From positions 124,001 through 188,000 of IMG/VR virus record IMGVR_UViG_3300044641_009805: a stretch of DNA of 64,000 bases. The stretch is one strand, 5' to 3'. This document shows, piece after piece, positions 14,696-64,000 of this stretch (position 1 is its first letter; every line of letters starts with the position of its first letter). Under the pieces are notes generated by a model. That model saw nothing but the letters and a program-made list of their open reading frames with translations, was not told the DNA's origin and did no database searches. The position numbers and the translations under genes were made by a program.

Positions 14696-14696
14696 T

Positions 14697-17965: not shown

Positions 17966-17967
17966 TC

Positions 17968-17996: not shown

Positions 17997-18002
17997 CTTT
18001 GT

Positions 18003-18935: not shown

Positions 18936-18939
18936 ACTA

Positions 18940-18963
18940 ATAAGGTAATGTAAATTACCTTAT
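18940..18963. promoter_or_regulatory. Perfect 10-bp inverted repeat overlapping the putative promoter of the nuclease gene
   Basis: ATAAGGTAAT-gtaa-ATTACCTTAT, lying within TTGAAC-18nt-TACCTT-6nt-ATG(18968). Confidence 0.5.
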
Positions 18964-18967
18964 AACA

Positions 18968-19786: not shown

Positions 19787-19846
19787 TTTTTTGTTAGTTT
19801 GATGAATTTTTATTACAACTTTTGAAAAGTAGGTAATATATCGTTG

Positions 19847-47686: not shown

Positions 47687-48664
47687 ATGCCTGTCAAATT
47701 TAGAAGAATTGGAATAACCAACAACATTTATAATTCTGGATTCCCAGTTGGAAGACCAGTTCTCGGTCCTACTGGGCCGCAAGGGGAAACAGGGCCAGCT
47801 GGTCCGACAGGCCCCACCGGTCCGACAGGTCCTACCGGACCAACTGGTTCCGCCGGTTCAATAGGTCCTGTTGGTTCTACTGGGCCAACAGGACCGACTG
47901 GTCCATCAGGATCAACTGGCCCACAGGGAGATAAAGGTGAAACAGGCGCTACGGGTGATCGAGGCGAAACAGGCCCAGCAGGACCTACTGGTTCGACCGG
48001 CCCGCAAGGCGACCGAGCAGACAATGGCGCAACTGGTGCCACAGGTGATCAAGGTCCCACAGGCGCAACTGGCCCCACCGGTCCGACGGGACCTCAAGGT
48101 GACAGAGGAGATAATGGTGCGACCGGTGCCACAGGAGACAGAGGCGAAACAGGAGCAACTGGGCCCACGGGTCCGACGGGACCTCAAGGTGACAGAGGAG
48201 ATAATGGCGCAACTGGCGCAACTGGTGCAGCGGGCGATCGTGGTGCGACAGGAGCCACAGGTGCTACAGGCCCGACAGGAACAGCGGGTGGTAGTTTCTT
48301 GTTTTACTTCGGTGCCACAAGCATAAGCGTTGATGCGACGAGATATTTGTATCCTGGAAGTTCTACTTCAGCAGCATCATCTACTATCATTGAAATTCCG
48401 ATGCCGATAAGAGGTAATGTCACTAAGATGTATCTTGCTCAATTGGCTGGTTCAGGAACTAGATCCATCGACTATAAACTATTCGTAAATGGATCTGCAT
48501 CAGGCATGGGTGTGTCAACAACCACAAGCGGCACTGGCGCAAATACGACGGACTCAATAGCGATATCATTTGGTGATAAAATTTCCGTGGCGTCAGTACC
48601 AGCTTCAGGAACAGGCACAACCCCATCTAATATAATGATAGTCATAGTTCTTGAGCCGACATGA
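47687..48664 (+). CDS. Collagen-like fibre protein (Gly-X-Thr rich) with a C-terminal beta domain
   Basis: Continuous Gly-X-Y from about 47765 to 48290, dominated by GPT/GAT/GET/GST; ~120-aa beta-rich C-terminus. Confidence 0.9.
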
Positions 48665-50316: not shown

Positions 50317-50379
50317 ACAATAATTCAGTTATTGGTTCTCAGCAAACGAAAATTATTGTGTTCGAAGATACGTAGTATT

Positions 50380-51555
50380 ATGTCTACGTTTTCAACGACG
50401 ATTGGTCCTACGCCGTTCGGATTTTTTGATTCGGACGCAACTTTTCAATCAGAAGCCGACGCAATGGTCTTGTTCGTCAAGCGCAAACTCGGTGATGATG
50501 TGTTGTCTGTAGAATTGACCAAAAAAGAGATATGGGCATGTTTTGAAGAAGCTTGTTGTGAATATAGTCGTTTAATACATGAGACAAAAATAACGTCCGA
50601 ATTGACAAACTTGTTGGGCTTGCCTACAGGAAGTGCAGATCTGACGAACAAATATGCCAGACAAACGCTGGAACACTTGTTACGTATGGCAGAACCATAC
50701 GCTTCCCAAGCTTTCGTAGGAGGATCTTACGATGCGACGTTAGGGTATCTTGACCTCGCCACTGGTCGACAAGATTATGACATTTATTCTGAAGTAAAAG
50801 ACAACGAAACAGGAATTGGAATCTATGATTCCATGGTATCAGGATCAAAAGGCAAGTTGAAGATTGCTGAAGTTTTTCATTTTGAGCCCCTTGCCGCTCA
50901 ACACTTTTTATTAAATGCATCTAATATTACTAACTTTTTGGCAACCAATTTTAATTACGAATCTTATGTTAACTCTACAGTTTTTTATGTGTTGCCTGTT
51001 TTTGAAGACGTGTTAAGAAGAGGGATGCTAGAGACAGCTTTTAGGGTTAGAAGGTCAAATTATAGCTACGAAATTATGGGCAGAAAGTTGAGAATTTATC
51101 CCATACCCACCACAGATTTGCAGACAGGAAGGCTGTACATCAAAGTCGTAAAACCGCAGAATCCTCTTATGCCAGCTTACCATGATGATTCAATTTATGG
51201 TATATCTGGTCCCAGTAACGTTCCTTTAGGTAATATTCCATTCGCGTCGATAAATCAACCTGGGAGACAATGGATTAGACAGTTTACTTTAGCCTTATGT
51301 AAAGAGTTGTTAGGATTGATTCGATCAAAATTTCAAACAGTTCCCATACCTAATGCCGATCTTCAGCTTAATGGCGAGGCTTTAATTACTCAAGCTCGCG
51401 AAGATAAAGAGAGATTAAACACTCAGATGAAAGAATTTTTGGCAAATTTGACATATGCAAAATTGCTTGAGACAGACGCCCTCGCCGCTGAAAACTTGAA
51501 CAAGCAGCTTAGATTTATCCCTATGCCGTTAGGCAAGGCTATTTCGATAGGATAG
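50380..51555 (+). CDS. Neck / head-tail adaptor (gp13-like)
   Basis: KRKLGDDVLSVEL, KLRIYPIP, WIRQFTLALCKELLGLIRSKF..VP.P...QLNG. Confidence 0.85.
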   Translation: MSTFSTTIGPTPFGFFDSDATFQSEADAMVLFVKRKLGDDVLSVELTKKEIWACFEEACCEYSRLIHETKITSELTNLLGLPTGSADLTNKYARQTLEHLLRMAEPYASQAFVGGSYDATLGYLDLATGRQDYDIYSEVKDNETGIGIYDSMVSGSKGKLKIAEVFHFEPLAAQHFLLNASNITNFLATNFNYESYVNSTVFYVLPVFEDVLRRGMLETAFRVRRSNYSYEIMGRKLRIYPIPTTDLQTGRLYIKVVKPQNPLMPAYHDDSIYGISGPSNVPLGNIPFASINQPGRQWIRQFTLALCKELLGLIRSKFQTVPIPNADLQLNGEALITQAREDKERLNTQMKEFLANLTYAKLLETDALAAENLNKQLRFIPMPLGKAISIG

Positions 51556-51570: not shown

Positions 51571-52236
51571 ATGGCTCGTCTTTTTATCACACAAAGAGAA
51601 ATTAATTTCATTTCTGACATCACAAAAGAAGTGATAAAAGATGTGATCGGCCAAAAGATCTATTACTATCCTATCTCAGAAACTAAGACCAAGACTCATG
51701 AAGTTTATGCTGAAGCTATGCAAAAAATATTCGATAATCCAATCGTTATTGATGTTTTAGTAAGCAATGAATTTCAGATCGATACAAAGATAGATAAGTT
51801 TGGAGTAGACACTAATTTTAAATCAGAGGTTTACATCCAACATAGAGACATGATAGAAAAAGGTATTAATCCTGCAATCGGCGATTATTATTCTTTTAGC
51901 GATGTTTTTTATGAAATAACTGAATACAGATTCATGAGAAACATTTACGGACAGGCTGAAAACATTGACGGAGTCGCGTTGGTGGGACTCAGGGTACGTG
52001 ATAGTCAATTCAAGGCTCTTGTTAAAGGCCCGACTGGCATTGAGTACACCGATAAAGATGCTACGCAAACCACATTCGTACAGCAAAGAGGTGTTGAAGA
52101 AAATGCCGAAGGTCCGACAGCCGACGTTAGAGATTTGGTGAAGCAAGGGGTTCTTGACCCACCAATCTCAGGTCCCAGAGAAGTTTCCAGCAAAGGAGAT
52201 TCTACTGGTGCTGGTAATTCTTTTTATGATGAATGA
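51571..52236 (+). CDS. Neck / head-closure protein (gp14-like)
   Basis: GQKIYYY, EVYAEA, KFG, PAIGDY...FYEI; follows gp13. Confidence 0.7.
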   Translation: MARLFITQREINFISDITKEVIKDVIGQKIYYYPISETKTKTHEVYAEAMQKIFDNPIVIDVLVSNEFQIDTKIDKFGVDTNFKSEVYIQHRDMIEKGINPAIGDYYSFSDVFYEITEYRFMRNIYGQAENIDGVALVGLRVRDSQFKALVKGPTGIEYTDKDATQTTFVQQRGVEENAEGPTADVRDLVKQGVLDPPISGPREVSSKGDSTGAGNSFYDE

Positions 52237-53573
52237 GCAGAACTATGCCTACCAGATTTAATTCTAACAGCAATCCTCAGTTTGGCGTGCCAGGGTTAAT
52301 TGATAAAACGCACCAAGGAACGGCTGAATTTACAATCCCTCCCGTCGGATTGGAAGACGTTGATGTTTCGATTTTTAATTTGTTTGATAAAGAGTTAACC
52401 TTGCAAGTCAATGGTGATAATTCAGTACCAAAAAATGTTCCTGTTATCTTTGCGTCGGGAGAAAAATGGGCAATCTTGAAGAAGAGAAAAGCCTTAAGAG
52501 ATAGAAATAATTCTTTGATACTTCCTTTGATCACTATCGTAAGGACGGGAATTTCCCAAAATTCAGACGAAGACATCGCCGGTAGAGGTATAAATCAACA
52601 AACCGGTGAAATCATCATAAAAAGACGCCTTGATAAATCCGATAGAAAATATCAAAATCTTATTAATCGATTTTTATTAAAAAACCAACTGAATGTAGCG
52701 ACTAATCCCAACAAAGAATACGTCGATGGTCAGATCTTGACTGACAGAACTGTCGGAGAAGATGAAGAATCATCAGCCATAATAGATGGAGCTTGGCTTG
52801 CAGATATCAAGAAAAAAAATATCTATGAGACCATAGTCATTCCTGCTCCTCAATTTTATAACATTCGTTATGAGATTACTCTGTGGACTCAATACACGCA
52901 ACATATGAATCAGATTTTAGAAAATATTGTTGCTTCTTTTTTACCGCAAGGTAATTCTTGGAAGCTTAACACGACCAAAGGATACTGGTTCATCGCTAAA
53001 GTTGAGGATAATTCATACGAACCCGAAAATAACGTCGATGACATGTCACAAGAGGAGAGAATCATCAAATATAAATTTAATGTAAAAGTTCTCGCTTACT
53101 TGTTTGCCACGCAGTCTCCTGGAACTGGGGTTCCAATAAAACGTTATGTTTCATCTCCGATTATAAAATTTGAAACCGTTGCGCCAAAAGACGATGATCC
53201 CGCGTCGCCTATCAATTTAGTTGAAGATCCTTTCCTCGGATCCGATGATCCGACTCTTCCGTTGTCTGACACCAAAAATAATAGAGAAGATCAACGCAGA
53301 AGCGGTACTAAACTATATTCTCCAACGGACTCTGCTGTCTCAAATGATCCTGCACTACAAACCAGGTCATCCAAACAAAATAGACCAGTGTACCAAAAAA
53401 TAATTACTCAAAACTCTTCAGGTAAAAATGTTGCGACTTACGCTAGGGTTTTTAGAACATCCAATGCGTCAGGAGAAACTGTCATAAAACCGTCAAATGA
53501 TTTTTCTTCAAAATCTAATCCTGCGGCTGCTGACACGCTACTAGGTGATCTAACATACGAAACTACTAAGTGA
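52233..53573 (+). CDS. Tail terminator / sheath stabiliser (gp15-like)
   Basis: VPVIFASGEKW, LPLITIVRTGI, P.FYNIRYEITLWT...MNQILE. Confidence 0.75.
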   Translation: MSRTMPTRFNSNSNPQFGVPGLIDKTHQGTAEFTIPPVGLEDVDVSIFNLFDKELTLQVNGDNSVPKNVPVIFASGEKWAILKKRKALRDRNNSLILPLITIVRTGISQNSDEDIAGRGINQQTGEIIIKRRLDKSDRKYQNLINRFLLKNQLNVATNPNKEYVDGQILTDRTVGEDEESSAIIDGAWLADIKKKNIYETIVIPAPQFYNIRYEITLWTQYTQHMNQILENIVASFLPQGNSWKLNTTKGYWFIAKVEDNSYEPENNVDDMSQEERIIKYKFNVKVLAYLFATQSPGTGVPIKRYVSSPIIKFETVAPKDDDPASPINLVEDPFLGSDDPTLPLSDTKNNREDQRRSGTKLYSPTDSAVSNDPALQTRSSKQNRPVYQKIITQNSSGKNVATYARVFRTSNASGETVIKPSNDFSSKSNPAAADTLLGDLTYETTK

Positions 53574-53601: not shown

Positions 53602-53609
53602 ATACTTAT
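53602..53609 (+). promoter_or_regulatory. Putative late promoter ATACTTAT
   Basis: ATANTTA motif recurring upstream of sheath 1, 2, 3, the tube, gp25 and the 41019 ORF. Confidence 0.55.
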
Positions 53610-53648: not shown

Positions 53649-56600
53649 ATGGCTGAACAAGTTTTTAGATCACCTAATTTTTTTGAAAGAGAAATTGAGC
53701 TTAAGGCACCGCCTCCGTCAGGACCCGTCGGAGTTCCTGCAGGCGTGATTGGTACTTCTAAAAAAGGACCGGCTTTCGTACCAGTTGCTGTTTCTAACTT
53801 TAACGAATTCGTAAGCATTTTTGGCGATCTAGATCCAAAAAAGTTTGGTCCCTATGCCGTCAATGAGTTTTTGAAAAATAGAACAGCGTTAACGTATATG
53901 CGCGTCCTAGGCGGAGGCTCTAATCGTTCTTTAAGCGACGTGCAAACGACGCTTATAACTGGTAAGGTAAAGAATGCCGGATTTAAGACGATCGGGACTA
54001 AAACTGATTTAACCGAGGATCAATACAAACGACATGTCGGGGGTGTGCAGTTCATCGTAGCTGATCACACGATCGATACGGCGGATGAACCAGCAGGAAT
54101 GCCTATGTTCACTGACAATGATTCTAGGACTCAAACCAGCAACGTTTCGCTTGTTAGAGGCGTCGTTCTTATGGCATCTGGCGCTAGAATGCTTGTTTTA
54201 GACGGAGATCAAAGCATAGGAACCAGCTTCGATGGTGTGGTTTCTGTTGATGATGAAGGAGCTGTAAAGAGCGGAAAAGTCAAGTTAGTCATTTCATCCA
54301 CTTTAGGATCAGCTTTCTCTTATGATGATGGGAAAGCAGGATTGAAGGTTTATACAGCATCTCTTAACCCTACTAGCGCAGATTACTTTGGTAAAGTGTT
54401 AAATAAGGATCCTGAAAAATTTGCGCAGTATCAGCACTTGCTATACACGGACTTTGCTGTAGATGATGAAGTTGCCTCGGTTCTTGATAATGATAAGGTA
54501 GCAATATTATCAGGATCAAGCTTTAATAGTCCAGCATCTGGAGATCCATCACTTCATTTCAGCGGAGCATTTGGTTCATTCGATACTAGATTCACGGCAC
54601 CCAAAACTCCGTACTTTATTTCTCAGCCTTTCGGAACGTCAGAATATGATTTGTTTGCCGTTGAATCTATCGACGATGGAGAATACGCAAACAGTCTTTA
54701 CAAGGTGTCGATCAGCAATCTTAAGGTTTCTGAGAATGACGCATATGATTATGGAACATTCAATCTACAAATTCGCGATTTTAATGATACGGACGTAAAT
54801 CCAGTTATCATAGAAGAGTTTGTAAATTGTTCACTCGATCCCGACGCCGACAACTATGTGGCAAAGTTAGTAGGAGATCGCAAAGTGACTTATGACTTTG
54901 ATCAAGACATATTGGTAGAAAGACGCATCGTTACGACAGGAAAGTACCAAAATATTTCAAAGTTTGTCAGAGTAGTCATGTCTCCCGCTGTGGAAGAGAA
55001 AAAAATCCCTGCAAAATCTTTGCCTTTCGGTTTCAGAGGGTTTGAGCTTCTGAAGACAAACGATAATTTGAAAGATTCTGTTCCAACAAGAAATAGACTA
55101 TGGGGATCAGTAGGTACCGGAGGCTCAAGTTTAGCAAGTTCTATTCTTCCTCCTGTACCTTACAGATATAAGGTAACCCGCGGCGCAGTTTCATCCGCTG
55201 CAAACTGGAGTGGCGAACCTGGACCTCTTGAGTCTACAAATCCAGCTTATTACTGGGGCGTGAAGTTTGAAAGGAATACAGAACCCTTAAACAACAACCT
55301 GAGTGAAGAAAAGAACGTTCTCATTGAAAGCTTCACAAAGTTCATGGGAATCAAAAAGCTAGATGTTCTAGTCACGGGTTCTGGTGCTGACACTTTCAAT
55401 AACAACAAATTCAGCCTTTCCAAGGTCGCTTTTGCAAATGGATCTATAGCTGAGTTAACTGGCACAGTTAGAACTCACATGAGAGAAGCAGCATATATCA
55501 GAAATGCCAAGGTTGATCCATCAACTTACACGATCTACGATTCAGGATTCGGAGATAGAATCACTTTAGCGAGCTTACTATCAAATGGAGAATCCTATCA
55601 GTTCAACAGATTCTCAACGTTTGCAAAGTTCTCAACATTCATGTGCGGAGGATTCGACGGATTGAATATCCTAGACCCAGCTGCCCGTCGAATGAATGAT
55701 AAAGCAACTTCATTTGAAACTCCTAAGGGAGCAGCCTCAACCACATATACATCACCAGGTCTTGCTTCTAACGTGGCTGGAACTGGAGTTGACAATAACT
55801 CAGTTAGTTCTTATGTCACAGCAATTGACGTAATGACTGATCCTCTGCAGGTCAATGTGAATCTGCTTGCCCTCCCAGGTATTCGTGAGGATTATCTCAC
55901 GAATTACACATCAAAGAAAGTAAGAGATTATGGATTGGCCATGTACATCATGGACATACCAAATTATGACGACAACAGTGATAGAATCTATGATGATTCT
56001 ACGAACAGAATCAACATCGAAAATACAGCAGCTATCTTCGAAGAAAGAACGTTCGATAACAACTACGTCGCGACCTACTTCCCCAACGTCTATGTCAATG
56101 ATACGACGAACAGCAGATACGTGAAAGTTCCTGCGTCTGTTGCAGCTCTCGGTGCATTAGGGTTCAACGACTTTATTGCATATCCTTGGTTTGCACCTGC
56201 AGGATTCAACCGCGCCGCGCTTGACTTCGTTAACAACGTAGAGGTCAGATTGAACGTCTCGGATAGAGATCGTCTATACGACGCTAGAATCAATCCTATA
56301 GCGACATTCCCAAGATTGGGATTCGTTATCTACGGACAGAAGACGTTACAAATAAGAAAGTCTGCTCTTGATAGAGTTAATGTGAGACGTTTGCTCTTAG
56401 AGGTTAAGAGATTAATCATCAACATAGCTAACAGGATCATATTTGAACAGAACACACCAGCCGTCAGAAACAAGTTTGTGGCGGATGCAATTCTTCAACT
56501 CAGCCTTATTCAGACCCAGGCAGGCATTGAGGCCTACCAGGTCATCATGAATGAGACGAACAACACACAAGAGGACATCGATCTCAATCGTTTGAATGGT

Positions 56601-56684
56601 CGAATCGTCGTCGTCCCAACGAGAGCAATTGAATTTATTGCGATCGATTTCATCGTAACAAACGCCGGCGTCGAATTTGTCTGA
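53649..56684 (+). CDS. Tail sheath protein 1 (gp18-like)
   Basis: SPNFFEREI, GTSKKGPAFVP, GGFDG, PWFAPAGFNR, INPIATF, YGQKTLQ, LDRVNVRRLL, IEFIAIDF. Confidence 0.95.
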   Translation: MAEQVFRSPNFFEREIELKAPPPSGPVGVPAGVIGTSKKGPAFVPVAVSNFNEFVSIFGDLDPKKFGPYAVNEFLKNRTALTYMRVLGGGSNRSLSDVQTTLITGKVKNAGFKTIGTKTDLTEDQYKRHVGGVQFIVADHTIDTADEPAGMPMFTDNDSRTQTSNVSLVRGVVLMASGARMLVLDGDQSIGTSFDGVVSVDDEGAVKSGKVKLVISSTLGSAFSYDDGKAGLKVYTASLNPTSADYFGKVLNKDPEKFAQYQHLLYTDFAVDDEVASVLDNDKVAILSGSSFNSPASGDPSLHFSGAFGSFDTRFTAPKTPYFISQPFGTSEYDLFAVESIDDGEYANSLYKVSISNLKVSENDAYDYGTFNLQIRDFNDTDVNPVIIEEFVNCSLDPDADNYVAKLVGDRKVTYDFDQDILVERRIVTTGKYQNISKFVRVVMSPAVEEKKIPAKSLPFGFRGFELLKTNDNLKDSVPTRNRLWGSVGTGGSSLASSILPPVPYRYKVTRGAVSSAANWSGEPGPLESTNPAYYWGVKFERNTEPLNNNLSEEKNVLIESFTKFMGIKKLDVLVTGSGADTFNNNKFSLSKVAFANGSIAELTGTVRTHMREAAYIRNAKVDPSTYTIYDSGFGDRITLASLLSNGESYQFNRFSTFAKFSTFMCGGFDGLNILDPAARRMNDKATSFETPKGAASTTYTSPGLASNVAGTGVDNNSVSSYVTAIDVMTDPLQVNVNLLALPGIREDYLTNYTSKKVRDYGLAMYIMDIPNYDDNSDRIYDDSTNRINIENTAAIFEERTFDNNYVATYFPNVYVNDTTNSRYVKVPASVAALGALGFNDFIAYPWFAPAGFNRAALDFVNNVEVRLNVSDRDRLYDARINPIATFPRLGFVIYGQKTLQIRKSALDRVNVRRLLLEVKRLIINIANRIIFEQNTPAVRNKFVADAILQLSLIQTQAGIEAYQVIMNETNNTQEDIDLNRLNGRIVVVPTRAIEFIAIDFIVTNAGVEFV

Positions 56685-56703
56685 TGCAAACGTCGGGAAT
56701 CTT

Positions 56704-56711
56704 ATACTTAT
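56704..56711 (+). promoter_or_regulatory. Putative late promoter ATACTTAT
   Basis: Same motif; AGGAG SD follows. Confidence 0.55.
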
Positions 56712-56736
56712 CATGCAAAGCGTAGGAGCGATATAA

Positions 56737-59700
56737 ATGGCACAGCTCAAATTTGGAAGCGCAGGAGTAACAACAAGAGAAATAGACTTAACGGGCCCCG
56801 TCGAAACAGGACCGACGGGGGTCCCCGCGGGGGTCATCGGCACGTCATTAAAGGGACCAGCATTCGTACCACTAACTTATGGAACGCTCAAGGACTTCTT
56901 CGCGAAGTTCGGTGAGAGCGATTCTAAGAAGTTTGGACCGATAGCTGTCTCTGAATGGCTGAGCCGTTCAACCGCAGTGACTTACCTTAGAGTCTTAGGC
57001 GTTGGTGATGGAAAGCAACGTCTTAAAACTGGAACAACCGCTGGTGAAGTTAACAATGCAGGATTCGTCGTAGGCGAAGAACAACCTGCAGAAGACGGAA
57101 CTTTATCACCGAATCCATATGCTGTTTCAGGAGGACCACTGGGTAGAACATACTTCTTAGGATGTTTTATGTCAGAGTCCGTAGGGTCAACTTTCTTAAG
57201 TGACGCTGGTCTTCAAGGAACAAGAAGGGTTAACTCTCCTTCTGTCTTATCAGCTTCAGTTCCAATCGTCAGAGGCGTGTTGATGGCTCCTTCAGGAGTC
57301 GTCTTGCGCTTGTCGGCAAGCTATGCTACGTCCGCCGTTCCTGGTTCTGCAACACCTGCAACACCCGCAAACCTGTTTGGAGCTTCGGTGGGAACGATCG
57401 TTCTTTCTGCTTCCAACGCACCTTCCAAACAAGAGTTCACGATGTTGCTTTACGGGCACAAAGGAACAGACGTTGCGTATCCAAACGTTCTAACTGCATC
57501 TTTTGACGTTAACTCAGCGAACCACATATCCAAGGTTCTTAACACAGATCCTTATAAGATGCAGCAAGCAGGTCACTATCTTGCAGCAAGCTGGGATATA
57601 CATCCTTCGTTGGCAGTCATTACTGGAACAGGATTCTTACCAGTAGACGCAGGATATAACTGTGTATCTAGCTTAACACACTCACTTGGATCAGAGAATT
57701 CGGTCTTCTTGTTAACTTCGTCTTTGGCAAGAAACTCAGGATCACAGACTGTACCCAATTACGAGTCCTTCCGCGATAGATTCTCCAATGCCAAGACCCC
57801 TTGGGTTATCTCTCAAAAGTTCGGCGGAAAACCAGTTAACTTGTTCAGATTCCACGCTCTAGACTCTGGAGCCAACATCTCTAACAAGGTCAAGATTGGA
57901 ATCGCCAACATCACTCCTTCAAATGCGGCTAATTACAAATACGGTTCATTCAACGTCGTTCTTCGTCGCATGGATGATACGGATATCGAACCTAAGGTTT
58001 TGGAGAGCTTTAATGGAGTCAACCTCGATCCATCTTCTGATCGTTACATCGGAAAAGTAATGGGCGACATAAATGCCTACTACGATTTTGATCGTGATGA
58101 CTCAAGCCAAAAATTGGTCATTGAAGGAAATTACACATTAAGATCCAGACACGTTAGAGTTGAGGTTTCTGATGAAGTGATAGATCTATCAGTCGATCCA
58201 ACTGCATTGCCAATGGGTTTCAGAGGTATTGCTCACCTCATGACATCAGGATCAGCTATCTTTAATGTGGATAATGCGGCATTAATAGACGGCGGATTGA
58301 TCCATAACGTGGTTGAACCACCTCTTCCATTCAGAAAGAACATTTTTGATGGCGTCGGTGCTCAAGCTCAAGAAAATTCTAGGTACTACTGGGGTGCAAA
58401 GTTCGAACACGTCGTAGATGTGAACGACCAAAACAGCAACGTAACACCAGACAAATCATTCAACAGCTTCACAAGCTACTTCCCGAATTTCTCGACTGCA
58501 TTCATGAACTTCGTGGTGGGTGACAACGCTGGTGCTGCGACGACTGACGAAAATGGAATCGTAGATTCTGACAAATTCTGTAACAACTTGTTCTCTCTAG
58601 AGCATGTTCAGATCAGAACAGGTTCTAACGGTACCGTTGAGCAAGCTGACGATTGGAAACATGCGACATACGTCAGAAATGGTGATATACAACCAGACGA
58701 TGGTGCCAAGACAAGAGCAGTGAAGGTCGACGATCTATCATTCTCGCTGAACAGAAGATTCCTTAAGTTCTCTTTGATCATGCAGGGTGGATTTGATGGC
58801 GTCAATATCTTTGATGAGGATGAACATCAGATCAATAATGCTGCTGTCACAGCAGACATGAACGACGCTGATAGAGGTCGCGAAAAGGGTCCCAACGTAT
58901 CCGCTTATCTCAAGGCCCTCGAGGTCATGAAGAACACGACCAATGTTGATATTCAGCTTCTCGCGATACCCGGCATCAGAACGCCTGTCGTTACAGATGC
59001 TGCAATCACGGCGACTGAAGAGCGTTTCGATGCTCTGTACATTATGGACATGGAACAGGTAGACAAGGACGGAAACCTGATCGATATCACGGGAGTCGTC
59101 AAACCTTCAGTCACGGAAACAATCCTGCAGCATAAGGCACGTAACCTCAACACGTCCTTCGCGGCAGCTTACTTCCCAGACGTTCTAATGAGAGATCCTT
59201 CAAAGCAATCGAACACAGTGGTCGTTCCACCTTCGGTCGTGGTCCTCGGAGCTCTAGCCTTGAATGACTCACTAGGATATCCTTGGTTTGCTCCAGCAGG
59301 TCAAACCCGCGGCGCTCTCCCCACGACTCTTGAGACAAGCATACAGCTCAAGGATCAGGACCTAGATTCGCTTTACGATGAGGACATCAACCCCTTGTAC
59401 GCTCAAATTATAAACGCACAAGGCGGATTGAACCCACGCGGCGGAGTGGTTGTTTGGGGTCAAAAGACGATGCTACAAGCTGCTTCTGCTCTTGATAGAA
59501 TCAACGTCCGCCGTCTCCTCATCGACGTTCGTCGTCAGGTTCGCGAGATTGCTCAAACGATCATCTTCGAGCCCAACCGCGAAGCAACCCTCGCAAGGTT
59601 CTCTGCAGCTGTCACACCACGTCTCCAGAGAATCCAAGCCCTCGCCGGTCTCGATCGTTTCAGAGTCATCATCGATTCTTCTACGACCACACAGGCCGAC

Positions 59701-59808
59701 GTCGAGAACAACACGGTCAGAGGTAAGATATTCCTGCAGCCAACAAAGACAATCGAGTTCGTCTCACTCGACTTCGTCGTTGCAAATAACCTGCAGTCAG
59801 TGACCTGA
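56737..59808 (+). CDS. Tail sheath protein 2 (gp18-like)
   Basis: SAGVTTREID, KGPAFVP, PWFAPAGQTRG, WGQKT, LDRINVRRLL, IEFVSLDF. Confidence 0.95.
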   Translation: MAQLKFGSAGVTTREIDLTGPVETGPTGVPAGVIGTSLKGPAFVPLTYGTLKDFFAKFGESDSKKFGPIAVSEWLSRSTAVTYLRVLGVGDGKQRLKTGTTAGEVNNAGFVVGEEQPAEDGTLSPNPYAVSGGPLGRTYFLGCFMSESVGSTFLSDAGLQGTRRVNSPSVLSASVPIVRGVLMAPSGVVLRLSASYATSAVPGSATPATPANLFGASVGTIVLSASNAPSKQEFTMLLYGHKGTDVAYPNVLTASFDVNSANHISKVLNTDPYKMQQAGHYLAASWDIHPSLAVITGTGFLPVDAGYNCVSSLTHSLGSENSVFLLTSSLARNSGSQTVPNYESFRDRFSNAKTPWVISQKFGGKPVNLFRFHALDSGANISNKVKIGIANITPSNAANYKYGSFNVVLRRMDDTDIEPKVLESFNGVNLDPSSDRYIGKVMGDINAYYDFDRDDSSQKLVIEGNYTLRSRHVRVEVSDEVIDLSVDPTALPMGFRGIAHLMTSGSAIFNVDNAALIDGGLIHNVVEPPLPFRKNIFDGVGAQAQENSRYYWGAKFEHVVDVNDQNSNVTPDKSFNSFTSYFPNFSTAFMNFVVGDNAGAATTDENGIVDSDKFCNNLFSLEHVQIRTGSNGTVEQADDWKHATYVRNGDIQPDDGAKTRAVKVDDLSFSLNRRFLKFSLIMQGGFDGVNIFDEDEHQINNAAVTADMNDADRGREKGPNVSAYLKALEVMKNTTNVDIQLLAIPGIRTPVVTDAAITATEERFDALYIMDMEQVDKDGNLIDITGVVKPSVTETILQHKARNLNTSFAAAYFPDVLMRDPSKQSNTVVVPPSVVVLGALALNDSLGYPWFAPAGQTRGALPTTLETSIQLKDQDLDSLYDEDINPLYAQIINAQGGLNPRGGVVVWGQKTMLQAASALDRINVRRLLIDVRRQVREIAQTIIFEPNREATLARFSAAVTPRLQRIQALAGLDRFRVIIDSSTTTQADVENNTVRGKIFLQPTKTIEFVSLDFVVANNLQSVT

Positions 59809-59828
59809 TAACCTCTGTCAAAACAGAC

Positions 59829-59864
59829 AGGAACCGCCTCTTTTAACGGGGCGGTTTCTTTTTT
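59829..59864 (+). terminator. Intrinsic terminator after sheath 2
   Basis: AGGAACCGCCTC-ttttaac-GGGGCGGTTTCT followed by a T run. Confidence 0.85.
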
Positions 59865-59983
59865 GTCGAGGGCATTAATTAATGTCAACAATTGCACGTG
59901 GTAAAACAATCAAGGACATATTGCAAAATATTCCCATGACATCTGATGATGATTCTTACATGTCAGATGTCTGAAGCAGGATT

Positions 59984-59991
59984 ATAGTTAT
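59984..59991 (+). promoter_or_regulatory. Putative late promoter ATAGTTAT
   Basis: Motif variant; the leader resembles that of sheath 2. Confidence 0.5.
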
Positions 59992-60010
59992 GGAACGTAG
60001 AGCGATATAG

Positions 60011-63000
60011 ATGGCTAAATTCGAATTTTCAAGCGCAGGAATATCAGCACAAGAGATCGGGACGATTGGTCCTGTCAAGACCCAACCGAGTGGTCTTTCG
60101 GCTGGCGTCATTGGAACTTCAAATAACGGTCCCGCTTTCGTTCCCTTTACGTTAGGATCTCTCACTGATTTTATCGACAAGTTTGGGACCATCGACGGCA
60201 AAAAGTTTGGTCCCCTTGCGGTCGCAGAGTGGATGAGAAATGCAAACTCTATCACCTACATTCGCATCCTCGGAGCAGGCGACGGAAATAAACGCCTGAC
60301 GTCTGGCGAGGTCACCAACGCAGGTTTCACTGTCGGAGAAGAACAACCTATCAACTCTAGTTCCTTAGGGTCCAATCCATATGCAAATCTCAATGGTCCT
60401 CTAGGCAGGACTTACTTTTTGGGATGCTTCATGTCAGAATCTGCAGGATCAGTCGTGTTCAGTTCGGCTGGGCTGCAAGGAACAGGCAGCATCAATGGGA
60501 TAACGGCAGGAGCCGTTCCCATCATCAGAGGAGTTCTGATGGCACCTTCGGGGGTGATCTTACGTTTATCTTCATCAGGAGGAGGATACGATTCATCGGC
60601 TCCCTTATCAAACTTTGTAGCCGATGAATCAACGGCTCACGGTACGACTTTAGGCTCCATCTCGCTTAGAAAAGATCAAACGCCATCACAGGAATTCGTT
60701 CTGCTGATGAATGGTCACAAAGGCACGACCTCAGCTCCTAATTTCATCACGGCTTCCTTCGATATGTTCTCCACCAACTACATATCGAACGTATTCAATC
60801 TCACGGCTTCATTGATACAAGAAAAAGGTCACTACCTTGCAGCTCATTGGGACATCTACCCCTCTCACGCTGTCGTGACTGGTACGGGAGTCGTATCTGC
60901 TGGCGCCGACGTGGCTTCAGATTCAAATAGAATACTAGACACTGAGAGATCAGTCTTTTTGATCACGTCTTCGTTGTCTAGAAACGTTGGATCGACGACG
61001 GTCCCAAATTATGAATCTTTCAGAGATCGATTCACTCACGCATCCACGCCTTGGATAATTTCTCAAAAACTTTTAGGAAAGCACGAAAATCTTTTCAAGC
61101 TCCATGCCCTTGACGCGGGGGCGAACGTATCCAACAGCTACAAGGTGACAATTCATGACGTACGTCCTAAGTCAGAAGGAAGTCCATACAAGTACGGTTC
61201 GTTCAGCCTGTCTGTGAGGTTGATAGATGATCCAGATAACGAAGACTCTAAACCGCTTGAAACCTTCAACGACCTGACGCTGGATCCATCTTCTGCCACT
61301 TACATCTGTAAAGTGATAGGAGACGTAAACGTCTACTACGATTTTGACAGACCTCCTGACGACCAAAGGATGGTGATCGAAGGCAATTATCCCTTAAAGT
61401 CTAGATACGTTAGAGTTGAAGTATCTGAAGAGGTTCATAACGCTACTCTGAATCCTGCGGCCATCCCGATGGGGTCCCGAGGAATTTCACACATAGTTAC
61501 TTCCGGCTCGGCTCCGCTAGCTCCATTGGGCGGCTCGGATATTCTACCTCTGGTCGATCAATACTACCTGCGAAATTCCGTGGTTCCTCCTCTACCAATG
61601 AGGCTAAACAACAAGGCAGCAGGTAACAACACGGACCCCCCGACGAAGAAGCCTTGGGGACCTATATTCGTTCACTCAAGTCCATTCGACTCGAACGATT
61701 TGCCAAACTCAAATCTCAATAAATCTTTCAACGCTTTTGCGCTTCACTATCCTGACCACTCGACGACAACTCTAAACTTTTCCGTGAGAGACAACGAGGG
61801 AACGCCCGACTCTACCACGAATGGGATATTGGACGCCGATAGGTTCTGTAACAACCTATTCACTTTAGAAAATGTCAAGGTGTTGACCGGTAGCAGCGGA
61901 ATCATCGAGTGGGGCTCTGCCGAGTATGTTCGTCACGGCTTCGTCGCGGTCGATGATGATGCAAAGACACGAGGGATCAACGTCTCTGATCTTCTATTGA
62001 AGAAAAACAGAGACTATCTAAGCTTTAATGTGATGTTCCAAGGAGGATTCGACGGGATCAACATCTTCGACTCTGATGAAGCTGCCATCAATGACGTCGC
62101 CGTCAGAGGAGACATGGAGGACATTGCACGAGGCGGATTGAACGGTTCAGCCGTGGTCTCTCACAGAAAAGCGATAGACATCATCAAGAACACAGTCAAT
62201 GCGGACATCGGCGTCATGGCCATCCCTGGAATAAGAGAACGCGTGATCACTGACGTCGCCGTGCAGGCGGCGGAAGAAAGAATGGACACTCTCTATATCA
62301 TGGACATAGAACAGTACGATTCAGGCTCAAATCCCATGTCCATGTCGGCTCTAGGCAAGTCCAACGCACCCTCAACGTCATTGACCATTGCGGCTCTTAA
62401 AGAACGCGGCGTGAACTCATCCTATGCAGCCGCATACTACCCCGACGTGATAATAACCCCTGATCAATTGCCTGATCAGGAGATAATCGTCCCACCCTCC
62501 GTGGCCGTCCTCGGCGCCATCTCACTCAATGACTCTGTCGGAGCTCCATGGTTCGCTCCCGCCGGCATGACCCGAGGCCGTCTCACAACGGCCCTACAAC
62601 CCGTGATCAACTTCGACGAACCCACGATCGATAACCTGTACATCAACAACATAAATCCACTCTACGCGACGACAAACATAAAACAACTATCCCCAGCCCA
62701 AACGTCAGGCGTCGTCATCTGGGGTCAAAAGACGCTGCTGCTATCGACAGAATCTTCTCTAGGCAGAATAGCCGTCCGCAGGCTTCTCATCGACGTACGC
62801 AAGGCCGTCAGACAAATCGCGCTACAATTCCTCTTTGAACCAAACGTAGAGAGAGTGTCAACCGTCTTCGCCTCACAGATCACAGAATACCTGTCGTCCG
62901 TCCGCGCCCGCAACGGCCTCCAATCCTTCAAGGTGAACATAGAATCACCCCTAAAATCTAGACAAAACGTCGAAAACAACTTGCTCAAGGGCAAAATCTA

Positions 63001-63076
63001 CCTCCAACCCCCAAAGACCCTTGAATTCGTCTCACTGGATTTCATCATCTCGAACGGTCTACAGTCCGAGATTTGA
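60011..63076 (+). CDS. Tail sheath protein 3 (gp18-like, closest to sheath 2)
   Basis: SAGISAQEI, NGPAFVP, PWFAPAGMTRG, WGQKTL, IAVRRLL, LEFVSLDF. Confidence 0.93.
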   Translation: MAKFEFSSAGISAQEIGTIGPVKTQPSGLSAGVIGTSNNGPAFVPFTLGSLTDFIDKFGTIDGKKFGPLAVAEWMRNANSITYIRILGAGDGNKRLTSGEVTNAGFTVGEEQPINSSSLGSNPYANLNGPLGRTYFLGCFMSESAGSVVFSSAGLQGTGSINGITAGAVPIIRGVLMAPSGVILRLSSSGGGYDSSAPLSNFVADESTAHGTTLGSISLRKDQTPSQEFVLLMNGHKGTTSAPNFITASFDMFSTNYISNVFNLTASLIQEKGHYLAAHWDIYPSHAVVTGTGVVSAGADVASDSNRILDTERSVFLITSSLSRNVGSTTVPNYESFRDRFTHASTPWIISQKLLGKHENLFKLHALDAGANVSNSYKVTIHDVRPKSEGSPYKYGSFSLSVRLIDDPDNEDSKPLETFNDLTLDPSSATYICKVIGDVNVYYDFDRPPDDQRMVIEGNYPLKSRYVRVEVSEEVHNATLNPAAIPMGSRGISHIVTSGSAPLAPLGGSDILPLVDQYYLRNSVVPPLPMRLNNKAAGNNTDPPTKKPWGPIFVHSSPFDSNDLPNSNLNKSFNAFALHYPDHSTTTLNFSVRDNEGTPDSTTNGILDADRFCNNLFTLENVKVLTGSSGIIEWGSAEYVRHGFVAVDDDAKTRGINVSDLLLKKNRDYLSFNVMFQGGFDGINIFDSDEAAINDVAVRGDMEDIARGGLNGSAVVSHRKAIDIIKNTVNADIGVMAIPGIRERVITDVAVQAAEERMDTLYIMDIEQYDSGSNPMSMSALGKSNAPSTSLTIAALKERGVNSSYAAAYYPDVIITPDQLPDQEIIVPPSVAVLGAISLNDSVGAPWFAPAGMTRGRLTTALQPVINFDEPTIDNLYINNINPLYATTNIKQLSPAQTSGVVIWGQKTLLLSTESSLGRIAVRRLLIDVRKAVRQIALQFLFEPNVERVSTVFASQITEYLSSVRARNGLQSFKVNIESPLKSRQNVENNLLKGKIYLQPPKTLEFVSLDFIISNGLQSEI

Positions 63077-63105
63077 AATATTTTTTGTTATATCATCTTT
63101 TGTGA

Positions 63106-63113
63106 ATAATTAT
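63106..63113 (+). promoter_or_regulatory. Putative late promoter ATAATTAT
   Basis: Motif variant 30 nt before the tube ATG; AGGAG SD. Confidence 0.5.
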
Positions 63114-63142
63114 GTTAGTTCCAATAGCAGGAGAATTCTACA

Positions 63143-63631
63143 ATGGCCGAAACTCTTGACGTCACGTCAATGATTCCAAACAAGTTTGAACCAAAGCGTA
63201 AGAACCGCTGGGTCCTCATGATTGAAGGCATCGACGCCTACATCATCAAGACAGCGGCTCGTCCACAAATCACGACAGAAGAAGTCCCAGTCCCGTTCAT
63301 CAACTCAACCCGCTACCTCGCAGGCAAAACGACGTTCAGCACCATGGGCGTCACCCTCCACGACCCAATCGCTCCATCAGGCGCGCAACAGGTCATGGAA
63401 TGGATCCGCCTCCACTTCGAATCGGTCAGCGGCCGCGCGGGCTACGCCGACTTCTACAAGCGTGACATCCAACTCAAGATGCTCGACCCCGTCGGCACCG
63501 TCATCGAACTCTGGGACATCAAAGGCGCATTCATCACGGATGCTAACTTCAACGAGGTCACCTACGAGGACGGAAACCCAACGGAAATATCACTAACTCT
63601 CCGTTTCGACAATTGCGTGCTGCAGTTCTAG
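63143..63631 (+). CDS. Tail tube protein (gp19-like)
   Basis: FEPKRKNRW, YLAGKT, LHDPIAPSGAQQVMEW, YKRDI...DPVG...W.IKGAF, ISLTLRFD. Confidence 0.92.
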   Translation: MAETLDVTSMIPNKFEPKRKNRWVLMIEGIDAYIIKTAARPQITTEEVPVPFINSTRYLAGKTTFSTMGVTLHDPIAPSGAQQVMEWIRLHFESVSGRAGYADFYKRDIQLKMLDPVGTVIELWDIKGAFITDANFNEVTYEDGNPTEISLTLRFDNCVLQF

Positions 63632-63639: not shown

Positions 63640-63696
63640 TTATACCAAATCATAAAGTGATGTATAATTACCTCTGTGGCGTCAAGCTGCAGAGGT
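63640..63696 (+). promoter_or_regulatory. Sigma70-type promoter plus an SD-sequestering hairpin (possibly also a terminator)
   Basis: TTATAC-17nt-TATAAT (63640-63668); hairpin ACCTCTGTGGC-gtcaa-GCTGCAGAGGT (63670-63696) contains AGAGGT just before the ATG at 63700. Confidence 0.6.
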
Positions 63697-63699: not shown

Positions 63700-64000
63700 A
63701 TGCTTAAATGTCCCCAATGCGACTTTCAAATTGAAAGCATCAATTCCCTTAGAATTCATGCTTCAAAAAAACATGATATTTCAAGCGAAGATTTATACAT
63801 TCAAGTTGTGCTAAAAGGAATTAAACCAACGTGCGAATGTGGGTGTGGTTCCGATACAAAATTTAACGGATTGGTGAATGGATACTCTAAGTTTGTATGG
63901 GGTCATGCTTCGAAAGTGAACAATAATTGGGGTCACAACAAAGAAGCCTTCAAGAAAAGTCTCACAACCAGAAGAAAAATGTGGGAAAATGGTGAAATTC
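63700..64000 (+). CDS. Zinc-finger protein, probable free-standing homing endonuclease, 3'-truncated
   Basis: Own translation: MLKCPQCDFQIESINSLRIHASKKH (C2H2) ...PTCECGCG...FVWGH; open to the end of the window; nuclease domain not visible. Confidence 0.6.
   Translation, partial: MLKCPQCDFQIESINSLRIHASKKHDISSEDLYIQVVLKGIKPTCECGCGSDTKFNGLVNGYSKFVWGHASKVNNNWGHNKEAFKKSLTTRRKMWENGEI

What the first reader, a model, noticed from the sequence alone, without database searches (positions are those of the whole stretch)
53649..63631. Three tandem giant tail-sheath paralogues with one visible tube gene
Seen: three intact sheath genes of 1011, 1023 and 1021 aa, each with its own putative late promoter. 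Sheaths 2 and 3 are much closer to each other than to sheath 1. Known: most myophages have one sheath gene (T4 gp18 is about 660 aa), whereas Afp and PVC injection systems use three sheath proteins in ordered layers. The gp13/14/15-like genes indicate a headed phage rather than an eCIS. Inference: a heteropolymeric or position-specific sheath, or alternative tail types.
Basis: partly seen in the sequence, partly recalled or inferred. Interest (0 to 1): 0.8.

Follow-up and report, generated by a model that had tools for sequence, protein, structure and literature searches.

The report
Three-gene tail sheath in lake jumbo phage
An uncultured jumbo phage common in lakes carries three full-length tail-sheath genes: two old, slowly evolving partners that probably build the sheath together, and a younger, fast-evolving copy whose expression signals suggest it is made in small amounts, a layout so far described only for phage-tail-like bacterial injection devices, not for headed phages.

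Summary
Three intact T4 gp18-type sheath genes, S1, S2 and S3 (1011, 1023 and 1021 aa), sit in tandem between a gp15-like tail terminator and a single 162-aa tube gene. Independent lake metagenomes carry the same arrangement, so it is not an assembly artefact.

- **Two duplications.** The S1/S2 split is old and is kept in every relative of a wide freshwater and marine clade. S3 arose once, later, from S2 in a subclade.
- **S1 and S2.** They evolve slowly and at the same rate (dN/dS 0.03–0.06). Their core and linker arms are the best conserved parts and are specific to each paralogue. Both have strong ribosome-binding sites and no terminator between them. They most likely co-polymerise into a two-component sheath, as reported for phage PaBG and seen in the Afp trunk.
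- **S3.** It keeps the full fold and is under purifying selection, but evolves 3.3 times faster. Its core and arms are its least conserved parts. All 13 genomes examined give it a weak ribosome-binding site, and all 12 scanned have a terminator upstream. It lies in a recombination island next to endonuclease-like genes. It is most likely a low-copy, position-specific sheath subunit.

No virion data exist. This is a new variant of a known kind.

The parts
50332..51555 (+). gp13-like neck / head-tail adaptor gene
   Evidence: PHROG 211 head-tail adaptor, E 6e-12. Precomputed PF26809 Phage_T4_gp13 on the identical gene in L006-L008.
51571..52236 (+). ORF in the gp14 position (221 aa), no family match
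   Evidence: No Pfam or PHROG hit. Conserved in position between the gp13-like and gp15-like genes in all relatives.
52233..53573 (+). gp15-like tail terminator / sheath stabiliser
   Evidence: PF16724 E 3e-13; PHROG 227. Weak Shine-Dalgarno as expected for a low-copy protein. Evolves fast, mean Kimura d 0.41.
53602..53609 (+). ATACTTAT box upstream of S1 (putative promoter element)
   Evidence: Conserved upstream of S1 in relatives whose spacers are otherwise diverged. One of only 5 ATANTTAT sites in the window.
53649..56684 (+). S1, sheath paralogue 1 (1011 aa), putative major sheath subunit
   Evidence: PHROG 23 E 2e-52. Forms a clade with 100* support. dN/dS 0.03-0.06. Strong SD, -8.0 kcal/mol. 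Invariant paralogue-specific arms.
56704..56711 (+). ATACTTAT box upstream of S2
56737..59808 (+). S2, sheath paralogue 2 (1023 aa), putative major sheath subunit
   Evidence: PHROG 23 E 1e-52. AF2 model pLDDT 79.5 with best Foldseek hit T4 gp18, E 1.4e-16. dN/dS 0.035-0.06. Strong SD, -6.6 kcal/mol.
59829..59859 (+). Intrinsic-terminator-like hairpin plus T-run after S2
   Evidence: Strongest terminator-like site in 49-64 kb. All 12 three-sheath genomes have a hairpin (dG -11 to -22) plus T-run here, with different stems; 0 of 9 S1-S2 spacers have one.
59984..59991 (+). ATAGTTAT box upstream of S3 (variant with G, the same in all genomes)
60011..63076 (+). S3, sheath paralogue 3 (1021 aa), putative low-copy specialised sheath subunit
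   Evidence: PHROG 23 E 3e-39. AF2 model pLDDT 80.4 with the same secondary-structure order as S2. Monophyletic and sister to S2 of the subclade, 100*. 3.3 times faster than S2. Core and arms least conserved. Weak SD, -2.0 kcal/mol in 13 genomes.
63106..63113 (+). ATAATTAT box upstream of the tube gene
63143..63631 (+). Tail tube gene (162 aa), single copy
   Evidence: PHROG 4542 E 3e-30. 72-93% identical across the whole clade. Strong SD, -7.3 kcal/mol.
63670..63696 (+). Terminator-like hairpin after the tube gene
   Evidence: Second-strongest site in the scan.

Best explanation
This is the tail module of an uncultured freshwater jumbo myophage (contig about 280 kb) with T4-type neck, terminator and tube genes and three full-length gp18-type sheath genes that play unequal roles. 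S1 and S2 descend from an old duplication. They are made together at high level and co-polymerise into a two-component contractile sheath, each subunit using its own conserved N- and C-terminal linker arms. S3 arose later by a single tandem duplication of S2. It is still a complete sheath protein but is made in small amounts from its own unit, after a terminator and with a weak ribosome-binding site. It takes a special position, most plausibly a terminal ring at the baseplate end or the neck end of the sheath. There its arms and core do not have to fit the invariant S1/S2 lattice and are free to diverge. Shown here: the gene structure, the homology, the order of the duplications, the selection regime, the expression signals and the recombination island. 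Inferred: co-assembly, stoichiometry and position in the virion.
For: Sheath identity:
- PHROG 23 matches at E 1e-39 to 1e-53.
- A family profile hits T4 gp18 at E 2.5e-42.
- The S2 model's best fold match is T4 gp18, E 1.4e-16.
- The S3 model has the same fold order.

Real arrangement:
- Independent contigs and runs carry it.

Two duplications:
- The S1 clade has 100* support and the S2+S3 clade 99*.
- S3 is monophyletic (100*) and nested next to the S2 of the three-sheath subclade.
- Relatives at 40-60% identity, freshwater and marine, carry S1 + S2 + tube only.

S1/S2 partnership:
- dN/dS is 0.03-0.06 for both.
- Their rates are nearly equal and tightly correlated (ratio 1.16, r 0.96).
- The N-terminal 100 aa and C-terminal 320 aa are the most conserved parts.
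- The linker arms are invariant within each paralogue and differ between them.
- Both have a strong SD (-8.0 and -6.6 kcal/mol).
- The S1-S2 spacer is 52-61 nt with no terminator in 9 of 9 genomes.

Precedents:
- Both PaBG sheath paralogues are found in virions (PMC7412058).
- Afp2 and Afp3 are both present in the helical-trunk PDB entry 6rbn.

S3 as a minor, specialised subunit:
- SD is -2.0 +/- 0.9 in 13 genomes, like the low-copy gp15-like gene at -2.3.
- A terminator lies upstream in 12 of 12 genomes.
- Its own box variant, ATAGTTAT, is the same in all genomes.
- It evolves 3.3 times faster than S2.
- N-arm region omega reaches 0.35-0.46, against 0.01-0.08 in S1/S2, and stays below 1.
- The family-invariant residues are kept, and every genome with sequence there has an intact ORF.
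- Residues 101-200 are held S2-like by selection, not by gene conversion.
- Afp4, Pvc3 and Pvc4 occur only in baseplate PDB entries, which shows that position-specific sheath paralogues exist.
Against: There are no virion proteomics, no structure and no cultured host, so co-assembly and copy numbers are inferred from sequence signals only. S3 shares its transcription unit with the tube gene, which must be highly expressed, so low S3 output rests on the weak SD alone. The SD energies assume a generic anti-SD, because the host is unknown. In the window genome itself S3 has a higher GC3 than S2 (0.53 against 0.47), unlike most relatives. RNA evidence is thin: a few small metatranscriptome contigs on S1 and S2 and none on S3. 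Rate covariation does not say which end of the tail S3 would occupy. Part of S3's divergence comes from allele exchange within a recombination island and not only from faster in-place evolution.
Confidence: 0.5

Rival explanations
1. PVC-like layout. Only one of S1/S2 forms the bulk of the sheath. The other, together with S3, forms special layers near the baseplate or the neck.
For: In PVC the trunk entry 6j0b holds Pvc2 only, and Pvc3 and Pvc4 occur only in the baseplate entry 6j0n. S1 is far diverged from S2 (32%) with deletions in the outer domains.
Against: S1 and S2 have equally strong SD sites and boxes, are adjacent with no terminator, and show the same low rate and the same core-conserved profile. 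A six-copy adaptor would be expected to look like gp15 or S3 in these respects.
Confidence: 0.13
2. S3 is not a virion sheath subunit. It may be a neofunctionalised copy (assembly factor, decoy against a host defence that senses sheath protein, or another intracellular role), or a passenger kept in a mobile cassette with a homing endonuclease.
For: S3 has an inverted conservation profile, with the core and arms least conserved. It has a weak SD. In L023 against L024, S3 plus an endonuclease-like ORF form a sharply bounded divergence island, and endonuclease-like genes flank the locus in several relatives.
Against: S3 has a full-length intact sheath fold and keeps all family-invariant residues. 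Omega is well below 1 over deep divergence. S3 is retained in every three-sheath genome. It sits between S2 and the tube, in the tube's transcription unit. The window phage has S3 without an adjacent endonuclease between S3 and the tube.
Confidence: 0.15
3. All three proteins co-polymerise along the whole sheath in a fixed ratio, giving a three-component trunk.
For: All three have complete sheath folds and hallmark motifs. Each has its own upstream box.
Against: S3's SD is about 5 kcal/mol weaker in all 13 genomes. Its arms and core vary freely while those of S1 and S2 are near-invariant, which is hard to reconcile with a shared repeating lattice. Two-sheath relatives build tails without S3.
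Confidence: 0.1
4. Alternative sheaths. Different paralogues are used in different particles, hosts or conditions, giving alternative tail types.
For: Each gene has its own box. S3 is a separately terminated unit and its alleles are swapped between phages.
Against: There is no switch, invertible element or terminator between S1 and S2. There is a single tube, terminator and baseplate set. S1 and S2 have been retained together without exception over deep time and evolve at matched rates.
Confidence: 0.07
5. Assembly artefact: strain variants collapsed into tandem copies.
For: None was found.
Against: The copies are only 28-52% identical, far too diverged to be strain variants. The same order occurs in dozens of independent contigs at 50-100% identity. 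One contig of an unrelated run spans the junctions, with no joints or loose ends at them.
Confidence: 0.01

Closest known systems
Two-component tail sheath of Pseudomonas jumbo phage PaBG (Lupandier group); Kurochkina et al. 2018, cited in PMC7412058
   Same: A headed jumbo myophage with two sheath paralogues that arose by gene duplication. Both PaBG proteins are detected in virions. S1/S2 here look like the same kind of solution.
   Different: The PaBG proteins are about 547 aa, 38% identical, and listed as gp76 and gp213, so far apart by gene number. That duplication is lineage-specific to its group. Here the genes are about 1,020 aa, in tandem, and belong to a different T4-like lineage (only about 28% identity to PaBG over the C-terminal domain). 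There is also a third paralogue with different expression signals and a different evolutionary regime.
Afp (Afp2/Afp3/Afp4) and PVC (Pvc2/Pvc3/Pvc4) extracellular contractile injection systems
   Same: Three sheath paralogues in one gene cluster. Afp2 and Afp3 both occur in trunk entries while Afp4 occurs only in baseplate entries. Pvc3 and Pvc4 occur only in the baseplate entry. The proposed layout of two major subunits and one minor one mirrors Afp.
   Different: Those are headless particles with sheath proteins of 350-450 aa. The family here is much closer to T4 gp18 (E 2.5e-42) than to Afp2 (1.9e-13), Afp3 (1.2e-11) or Afp4 (9e-4). It lies among gp13/gp15-like neck genes on a ~280-kb phage contig. 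The paralogy arose independently within this phage clade.
T4 gp18 single-component sheath
   Same: Best sequence and fold match. Same gene order: gp15-like, then sheath, then tube.
   Different: T4 has one 659-aa sheath gene. Here there are three of about 1,020 aa, with roughly 600 aa of additional outer domains.
Other tandem sheath pairs seen here (uncultured 484-kb phage LR756508; MAG contig L079)
   Same: Two adjacent sheath ORFs upstream of a 162-aa tube, which shows that sheath duplication recurs in large phages. Evseev et al. 2022 also note that some phages have two copies.
   Different: Shorter proteins (824+824 aa and 583+577 aa). In the tree the LR756508 copies fall outside the S1 and S2 clades on long branches, so they probably duplicated independently. 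No third copy is present.

Membership tests
Contractile-tail sheath protein, T4 gp18 type (PHROG 23; Pfam PF04984 + PF17482) | Sequence match to the conserved C-terminal sheath domains | tested here: met
   PHROG 23 E 1.8e-52 (S1), 9.9e-53 (S2) and 3.2e-39 (S3). The family profile hits T4 gp18 at E 2.5e-42. The Pfam domains match only below the curated cut-offs.
Contractile-tail sheath protein, T4 gp18 type (PHROG 23; Pfam PF04984 + PF17482) | Sheath fold | tested here: met
   S2 model pLDDT 79.5, best PDB hit T4 gp18 at E 1.4e-16, and every listed BFVD hit that carries a function name but one is a tail sheath. S3 model pLDDT 80.4 with the same element order.
Contractile-tail sheath protein, T4 gp18 type (PHROG 23; Pfam PF04984 + PF17482) | Gene lies between the tail terminator and the tube gene of a tailed phage | tested here: met
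   The gp15-like gene lies upstream and the tube gene downstream, conserved in all relatives.
Contractile-tail sheath protein, T4 gp18 type (PHROG 23; Pfam PF04984 + PF17482) | Polymerises around the tube and contracts | not testable with these tools
   Needs virions or recombinant assembly.
Two-component phage sheath (PaBG type) | Two sheath paralogues produced by duplication within the phage lineage | tested here: met
   The S1 and S2 clades are each well supported, and the pair is present in all clade members.
Two-component phage sheath (PaBG type) | Both paralogues present in the virion | not testable with these tools
   No cultured phage and no proteome. Only indirect signals are available: strong SD on both, and equal constraint.
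Two-component phage sheath (PaBG type) | Common descent with the PaBG pair | tested here: inconclusive
   Only about 28% identity over the C-terminal domain. PaBG's duplication is reported as specific to its own group, and single-sheath relatives such as Mel-JY01 branch outside S1+S2. Independent origin is likely, but no joint tree with PaBG was built.
Afp/PVC-type eCIS sheath triplet | Three sheath paralogues in one cluster | tested here: met
Afp/PVC-type eCIS sheath triplet | Headless particle locus, with no head-tail joining genes | tested here: not met
   gp13-like and gp15-like genes are adjacent. The contig is 278-282 kb and listed in IMG/VR.
Afp/PVC-type eCIS sheath triplet | Orthology to Afp2/3/4 or Pvc2/3/4 | tested here: not met
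   Profile E-values are 1e-9 to 1e-16 for eCIS sheaths against 1e-40 to 1e-42 for T4-type gp18. The paralogy arose inside the phage clade.
Afp/PVC-type eCIS sheath triplet | Paralogues occupy defined layers (trunk or baseplate-proximal) | not testable with these tools
   Only single-chain prediction was available. The expression and rate signals are compatible with this.

The most novel reading that the evidence does not exclude
A T4-like headed phage lineage has independently evolved an Afp-like division of labour in its sheath: a two-protein helical trunk (S1+S2) plus a specialised low-copy ring (S3). The specialised subunit is a hypervariable cassette, swapped between related phages together with homing-endonuclease-like genes. 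That would make one end of the contractile sheath a target of diversifying selection, for example to match fast-changing baseplate or terminator partners, to tune the contraction trigger, or to escape a host defence that senses sheath protein.
Probability: 0.3. Interest if true: 0.75.

Novelty: new variant of a known kind. Interest (0 to 1): 0.6.

Why it matters
Contractile sheaths of headed phages are treated as homopolymers of one protein. The known exceptions are one two-protein case (PaBG) and the headless Afp and PVC devices.

This clade is widespread: this stretch of the phage is found in at least 15 lake and freshwater metagenome runs, and thousands of related proteins occur in public data. 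It has kept two sheath genes over deep time and added a third with a clearly different regime.

If S1 and S2 form an ordered heteropolymer, this gives a natural system for asking how lattice symmetry, contraction energetics and assembly order cope with two subunit types. If S3 is a terminal ring, it would show that position-specific sheath layers are not peculiar to eCIS. It would also point to an unexpected site of rapid evolution in a phage tail.

The case also gives a practical rule for annotation. Extra sheath genes in jumbo phages should not be dismissed as redundant copies or assembly errors.

Tried and rejected
It was replaced by pairwise Nei-Gojobori estimates on close pairs. No branch-site or RELAX-type test could be run.
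I removed those rows, and the Mel-JY01 row as well, and did not send them elsewhere.
- **Near-identity DNA search against deposited phages** found nothing. No cultured relative is closer than about 34% identity, over part of the protein only.
- **Gene conversion between S2 and S3** as the cause of the S2-like patch at residues 101-200 was rejected: same-genome and different-genome identities are equal.
- **Rate covariation to place S3 at the neck or baseplate end.** The first attempt mixed up S2 and S3 in several genomes. The corrected run gave equal residual correlation with the gp15-like and gp53-like proteins (0.55 and 0.51), so it does not discriminate.
- **ATANTTAT as a general late promoter.** It is not enriched in the window. 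It is confined to the sheath and tube genes.
- **Genome-assembly scan for a host clue** returned only MAG contigs with inconsistent taxonomy. There are no tRNAs in the window.
- **RNA evidence.** Only small contigs were recovered, and two of the 'RNA' libraries are probably DNA. This is too thin to rank expression.
- **Sigma-70 promoter scan** was not above the shuffled expectation.
- **Literature search** found no report of three sheath genes in a headed phage. The library is incomplete, so this does not prove absence.


Full report

Yes. The + strand carries ORFs at 53649-56684 (1011 aa, S1), 56737-59808 (1023 aa, S2), 60011-63076 (1021 aa, S3) and 63143-63631 (162 aa).
- All three long ORFs match the tail-sheath family PHROG 23 (E 1e-39 to 1e-53). 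The short one matches the tail-tube family PHROG 4542 (E 3e-30).
- The Pfam sheath domains match, but below the curated cut-offs.
- Pairwise identities are S1-S2 32%, S2-S3 52% and S1-S3 28% over the full length.
- Upstream lie a gp15-like tail terminator (PF16724, E 3e-13), an unassigned ORF in the gp14 position, a gp13-like adaptor, an endolysin and a collagen-like fibre gene.

**2. Is it an artefact?**

No.
- The exact S2 protein occurs on contigs of 278-282 kb and on shorter contigs from other samples, with the same neighbours.
- At least 15 lake or freshwater DNA runs from many studies hold 77-100% of the sampled words of 53649-59648.
- In one unrelated run a single 16,984-bp contig covers 56000-61999 with 38 point differences, no indels and no joints. 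In another run a contig bridges the S2-S3 spacer.
- Copies that are only 28-52% identical could not come from collapsed strains.

**3. What the proteins are**
- A profile of the family finds T4 gp18 as the best solved relative (E 2.5e-42, C-terminal ~200 residues). The eCIS sheaths are far behind: Pvc2 3e-15, Afp2 2e-13, Afp3 1e-11, Afp4 9e-4.
- An AlphaFold2 model of S2 (pLDDT 79.5, pTM 0.80) has T4 gp18 as its top Foldseek hit (E 1.4e-16). It matches tail sheaths in the viral library, the closest from an uncultured phage.
- The S3 model is as confident (pLDDT 80.4, pTM 0.82) and has the same order of secondary-structure elements.
- These are therefore gp18-type sheaths with about 600 extra residues inserted between the conserved N-terminal ~100 and C-terminal ~320 residues.
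- No deposited phage is close. The best is Microcystis phage Mel-JY01, with one 812-aa sheath followed by a tube.

**4. Distribution and history**

The large protein database holds more than 5,000 relatives, many of 1,010-1,030 aa on contigs of 100-360 kb. I fetched 61 viral-contig loci and 39 genome-assembly loci and counted sheath homologues in each.
- Every locus whose S2 is at least 68% identical to the window's, and which has sequence downstream, carries S1, S2 and S3.
- Lineages at about 57-62% (L005, L044, L045, L049, L070) and about 37-48% (L063-L068, L071, L072, L074) carry S1-like + S2-like + tube only.
- More distant lineages have one sheath.
- In a maximum-likelihood tree of 62 sequences, S1 is one clade (100*) and S2+S3 another (99*). 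S3 is monophyletic (100*) and sister to the S2 genes of the three-sheath genomes (100*), inside the two-sheath S2 lineages.

So there were two duplications. An old one (S1 and S2) predates the whole clade. A single younger one (S2 to S3) defines a subclade.

Tandem sheath pairs also occur elsewhere: two 824-aa ORFs in the 484-kb phage LR756508, and 583+577 aa in L079. Sheath duplication therefore recurs in large phages.

**5. Selection**

Pairwise Nei-Gojobori estimates on six close genome pairs give the following.

| Copy | dN/dS |
|---|---|
| S1 | 0.03-0.06 |
| S2 | 0.035-0.06 |
| S3, two pairs | 0.04-0.05 |
| S3, four pairs of another subclade | 0.14-0.24 |

None of the copies is decaying.

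Over the same 12 genomes the mean patristic distances are 0.30 (S1), 0.34 (S2) and 1.13 (S3). S1 and S2 evolve at nearly the same rate and in step (r 0.96). S3 is 3.3 times faster than S2.

**6. Where the constraint lies**
- In S1 and S2 the N-terminal 100 and C-terminal ~320 residues are the most conserved parts, with within-group identity of 0.81-0.98. This is the sheath core plus the linker arms that tie subunits together (described for phage phiKp24 in PMC9700779).
- In S3 those same regions are the least conserved (0.42-0.58). Residues 101-200 are the most conserved (0.75) and remain S2-like (0.67-0.72).
- By region, S3's omega reaches 0.35-0.46 in the N-terminal part and 0.09-0.25 in the C-terminal core, against 0.01-0.08 in S1 and S2.
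- S1 and S2 each have N- and C-terminal arms that are invariant within the paralogue but differ between paralogues. S3's arms vary freely, though the family-invariant residues and short motifs are retained.
- The S2-like patch in S3 is not due to gene conversion. S2-S3 identity is the same within and between genomes, and the longest identical DNA run is 15 nt.

**7. Expression signals**

*Upstream box.* An ATANTTAT box lies 20-40 nt upstream of the start codon of S1, S2, S3 and the tube. These are four of only five such sites in the 64 kb.
- The box is conserved in relatives whose spacers are otherwise diverged.
- It reads ATACTTAT for S1 in every relative from L003 to L044, and for S2 in all of them but L022 and L044.
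- It reads ATAGTTAT for S3 in every genome.

*Terminators.* The strongest terminator-like hairpin in 49-64 kb lies just after S2 (59829-59859). The next strongest lies just after the tube (63670-63696).
- All 12 three-sheath genomes have a hairpin of -11 to -22 kcal/mol plus a T-run in the S2-S3 spacer, with different stem sequences.
- None of 9 S1-S2 spacers has one.
- The likely units are [S1-S2] and [S3-tube].

*Ribosome-binding strength.* Shine-Dalgarno pairing energies separate the genes cleanly across genomes.

| Gene | SD pairing energy (kcal/mol) |
|---|---|
| S1 | -8.0 +/- 0.4 |
| S2 | -6.6 +/- 0.4 |
| tube | -7.3 +/- 0.2 |
| S3 (13 genomes) | -2.0 +/- 0.9 |
| gp15-like | -2.3 |

In T4, gp15 is a six-copy protein (PMC3622015).

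*Other signals.*
- In most relatives S3 also has a lower GC3 than S2, closer to the gp15-like gene. The window genome is an exception.
- True metatranscriptome runs that hold S1/S2 words are not listed for S3, while probable-DNA libraries hold all three alike. This is weak, but it points the same way.

**8. S3 sits in a divergence island**

L023 and L024 differ by 0.03-0.06 (Kimura distance) in gp13, gp14, gp15, S1, S2, tube and gp53-like, but by 0.37 in S3.
- Nucleotide identity falls from about 0.9 to 0.64-0.84 exactly from the S2-S3 spacer to just before the tube. That stretch covers S3 plus a reverse-strand ORF with a restriction-endonuclease-like domain.
- Synonymous divergence is also raised there (1.18 against 0.48-0.58). 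Allele exchange, or locally raised mutation, therefore contributes to S3's divergence.
- Other relatives carry a GIY-YIG gene (L044), or, in the window phage, a TnsA-like endonuclease gene just after the tube.

**9. Interpretation**

*S1 and S2.* The simplest reading of their features is an obligate two-component sheath. Those features are:
- unbroken co-retention;
- matched slow rates;
- a core-conserved profile;
- paralogue-specific invariant arms;
- strong translation signals;
- no terminator between them.

Precedents exist. PaBG has two sheath paralogues, both found in the virion (PMC7412058). The Afp helical-trunk entry contains both Afp2 and Afp3.

*S3.* It has the full fold and is maintained by selection, but its expression signals resemble those of a low-copy protein. 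Its lattice-forming parts are free to vary. That is hard to square with a repeating position among invariant S1/S2 neighbours. It fits a special position such as a terminal ring. Position-specific sheath paralogues are known: Afp4, Pvc3 and Pvc4 occur only in baseplate entries.

*Which end.*
- In phiKp24 the arms of a subunit reach the ring below. If 'below' means towards the baseplate, the first ring's arms contact the baseplate and not another sheath ring.
- That would suit S3's variable arms, but this step is an inference.
- Rate covariation did not discriminate between the neck and baseplate ends.

**10. Comparison and novelty**
- The proteins are members of the gp18-type sheath family.
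- The S1/S2 pair works like the PaBG two-component sheath but probably arose independently.
- The triplet resembles Afp and PVC in number and in the proposed division of labour. It is not a member of that group: it has neck genes, lies on a ~280-kb phage contig, is closer to gp18, and its paralogy arose inside the phage clade.
- I found no report of three sheath genes in a headed phage. A review of sheath evolution mentions only two-copy cases and set the extra copies aside.
- I rate this a new variant of a known kind. It is of solid interest to tail structural biologists, and the key claims (co-assembly, stoichiometry, position) are still untested.

Noticed in passing
window 2542-22248 (+ strand): About 20 co-oriented, often overlapping ORFs (many TTG starts, GC about 32%) form a sugar-biosynthesis and glycosyltransferase cluster. 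It includes GT2 and GT1/GT4 enzymes, an NAD-dependent epimerase/dehydratase, a Polysacc_synt_2 (PseB/FlaA1-like) dehydratase and a DegT/PseC-like aminotransferase. It lies next to the baseplate and tail module. It could glycosylate virion proteins or remodel the host surface.
   Followed up: partly
window 44884-46080 and 46096-47286: A second tandem paralogue pair (398 and 396 aa, 63% identical, no Pfam or PHROG match) lies just upstream of the collagen-like fibre gene at 47687-48664. They may be fibre or fibre-assembly proteins.
   Followed up: partly
window ~63700-64000 (runs off the end); L006:16964-17863: A TnsA-like endonuclease gene (PF08722, E 4e-12) follows the tube gene in this phage. 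Relatives have a GIY-YIG gene (L044:13113-13973) or a restriction-endonuclease-like ORF (L023:16329-17987, - strand) between the sheath and tube genes. The sheath-tube junction is a hotspot for mobile endonucleases.
   Followed up: partly
L023 and L024, 13180-17950: There is a sharply bounded divergence island (nt identity 0.64-0.84 against about 0.9 in the flanks) covering exactly S3 plus the endonuclease-like ORF. A second divergent zone starts at about 20650, in the large downstream protein.
   Followed up: yes
L071:10001-13552, L072:10001-14524, L074:5281-9477: In two-sheath relatives on MAG contigs, S2 has grown to 1183-1507 aa while S1 stays at about 1050-1076 aa. The outer domains of only one partner are expanding.
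   Followed up: no
L079:9515-13035; L002:7825-13788; L090:10906-12736: Other duplications of tail-tube-complex genes occur elsewhere: a tandem 583+577-aa sheath pair (L079), two 824-aa sheath ORFs in the 484-kb phage LR756508 (L002), and three adjacent tube-like ORFs (L090).
   Followed up: partly
window, whole length; L005: There is a strong GC gradient along the window, from 30% at the left end to 48% at the right. The tube gene has GC3 of 0.71 against 0.32 for the gp15-like gene. Across the clade the sheath genes range from about 34% to 63% GC (L005), which suggests hosts of very different base composition.
   Followed up: no
window 52233-53573 and orthologues: The gp15-like tail terminator evolves about twice as fast as S1, S2, gp13 and gp14 (mean Kimura d 0.41 against 0.18-0.24). 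It is the second fastest gene in the module after S3.
   Followed up: partly
window 53649-63076 against L011: Synonymous divergence between the window phage and its closest relative falls along the locus: S1 0.85, S2 0.56, S3 0.18. This indicates mosaic recombination within the sheath region even between near-identical phages.
   Followed up: no
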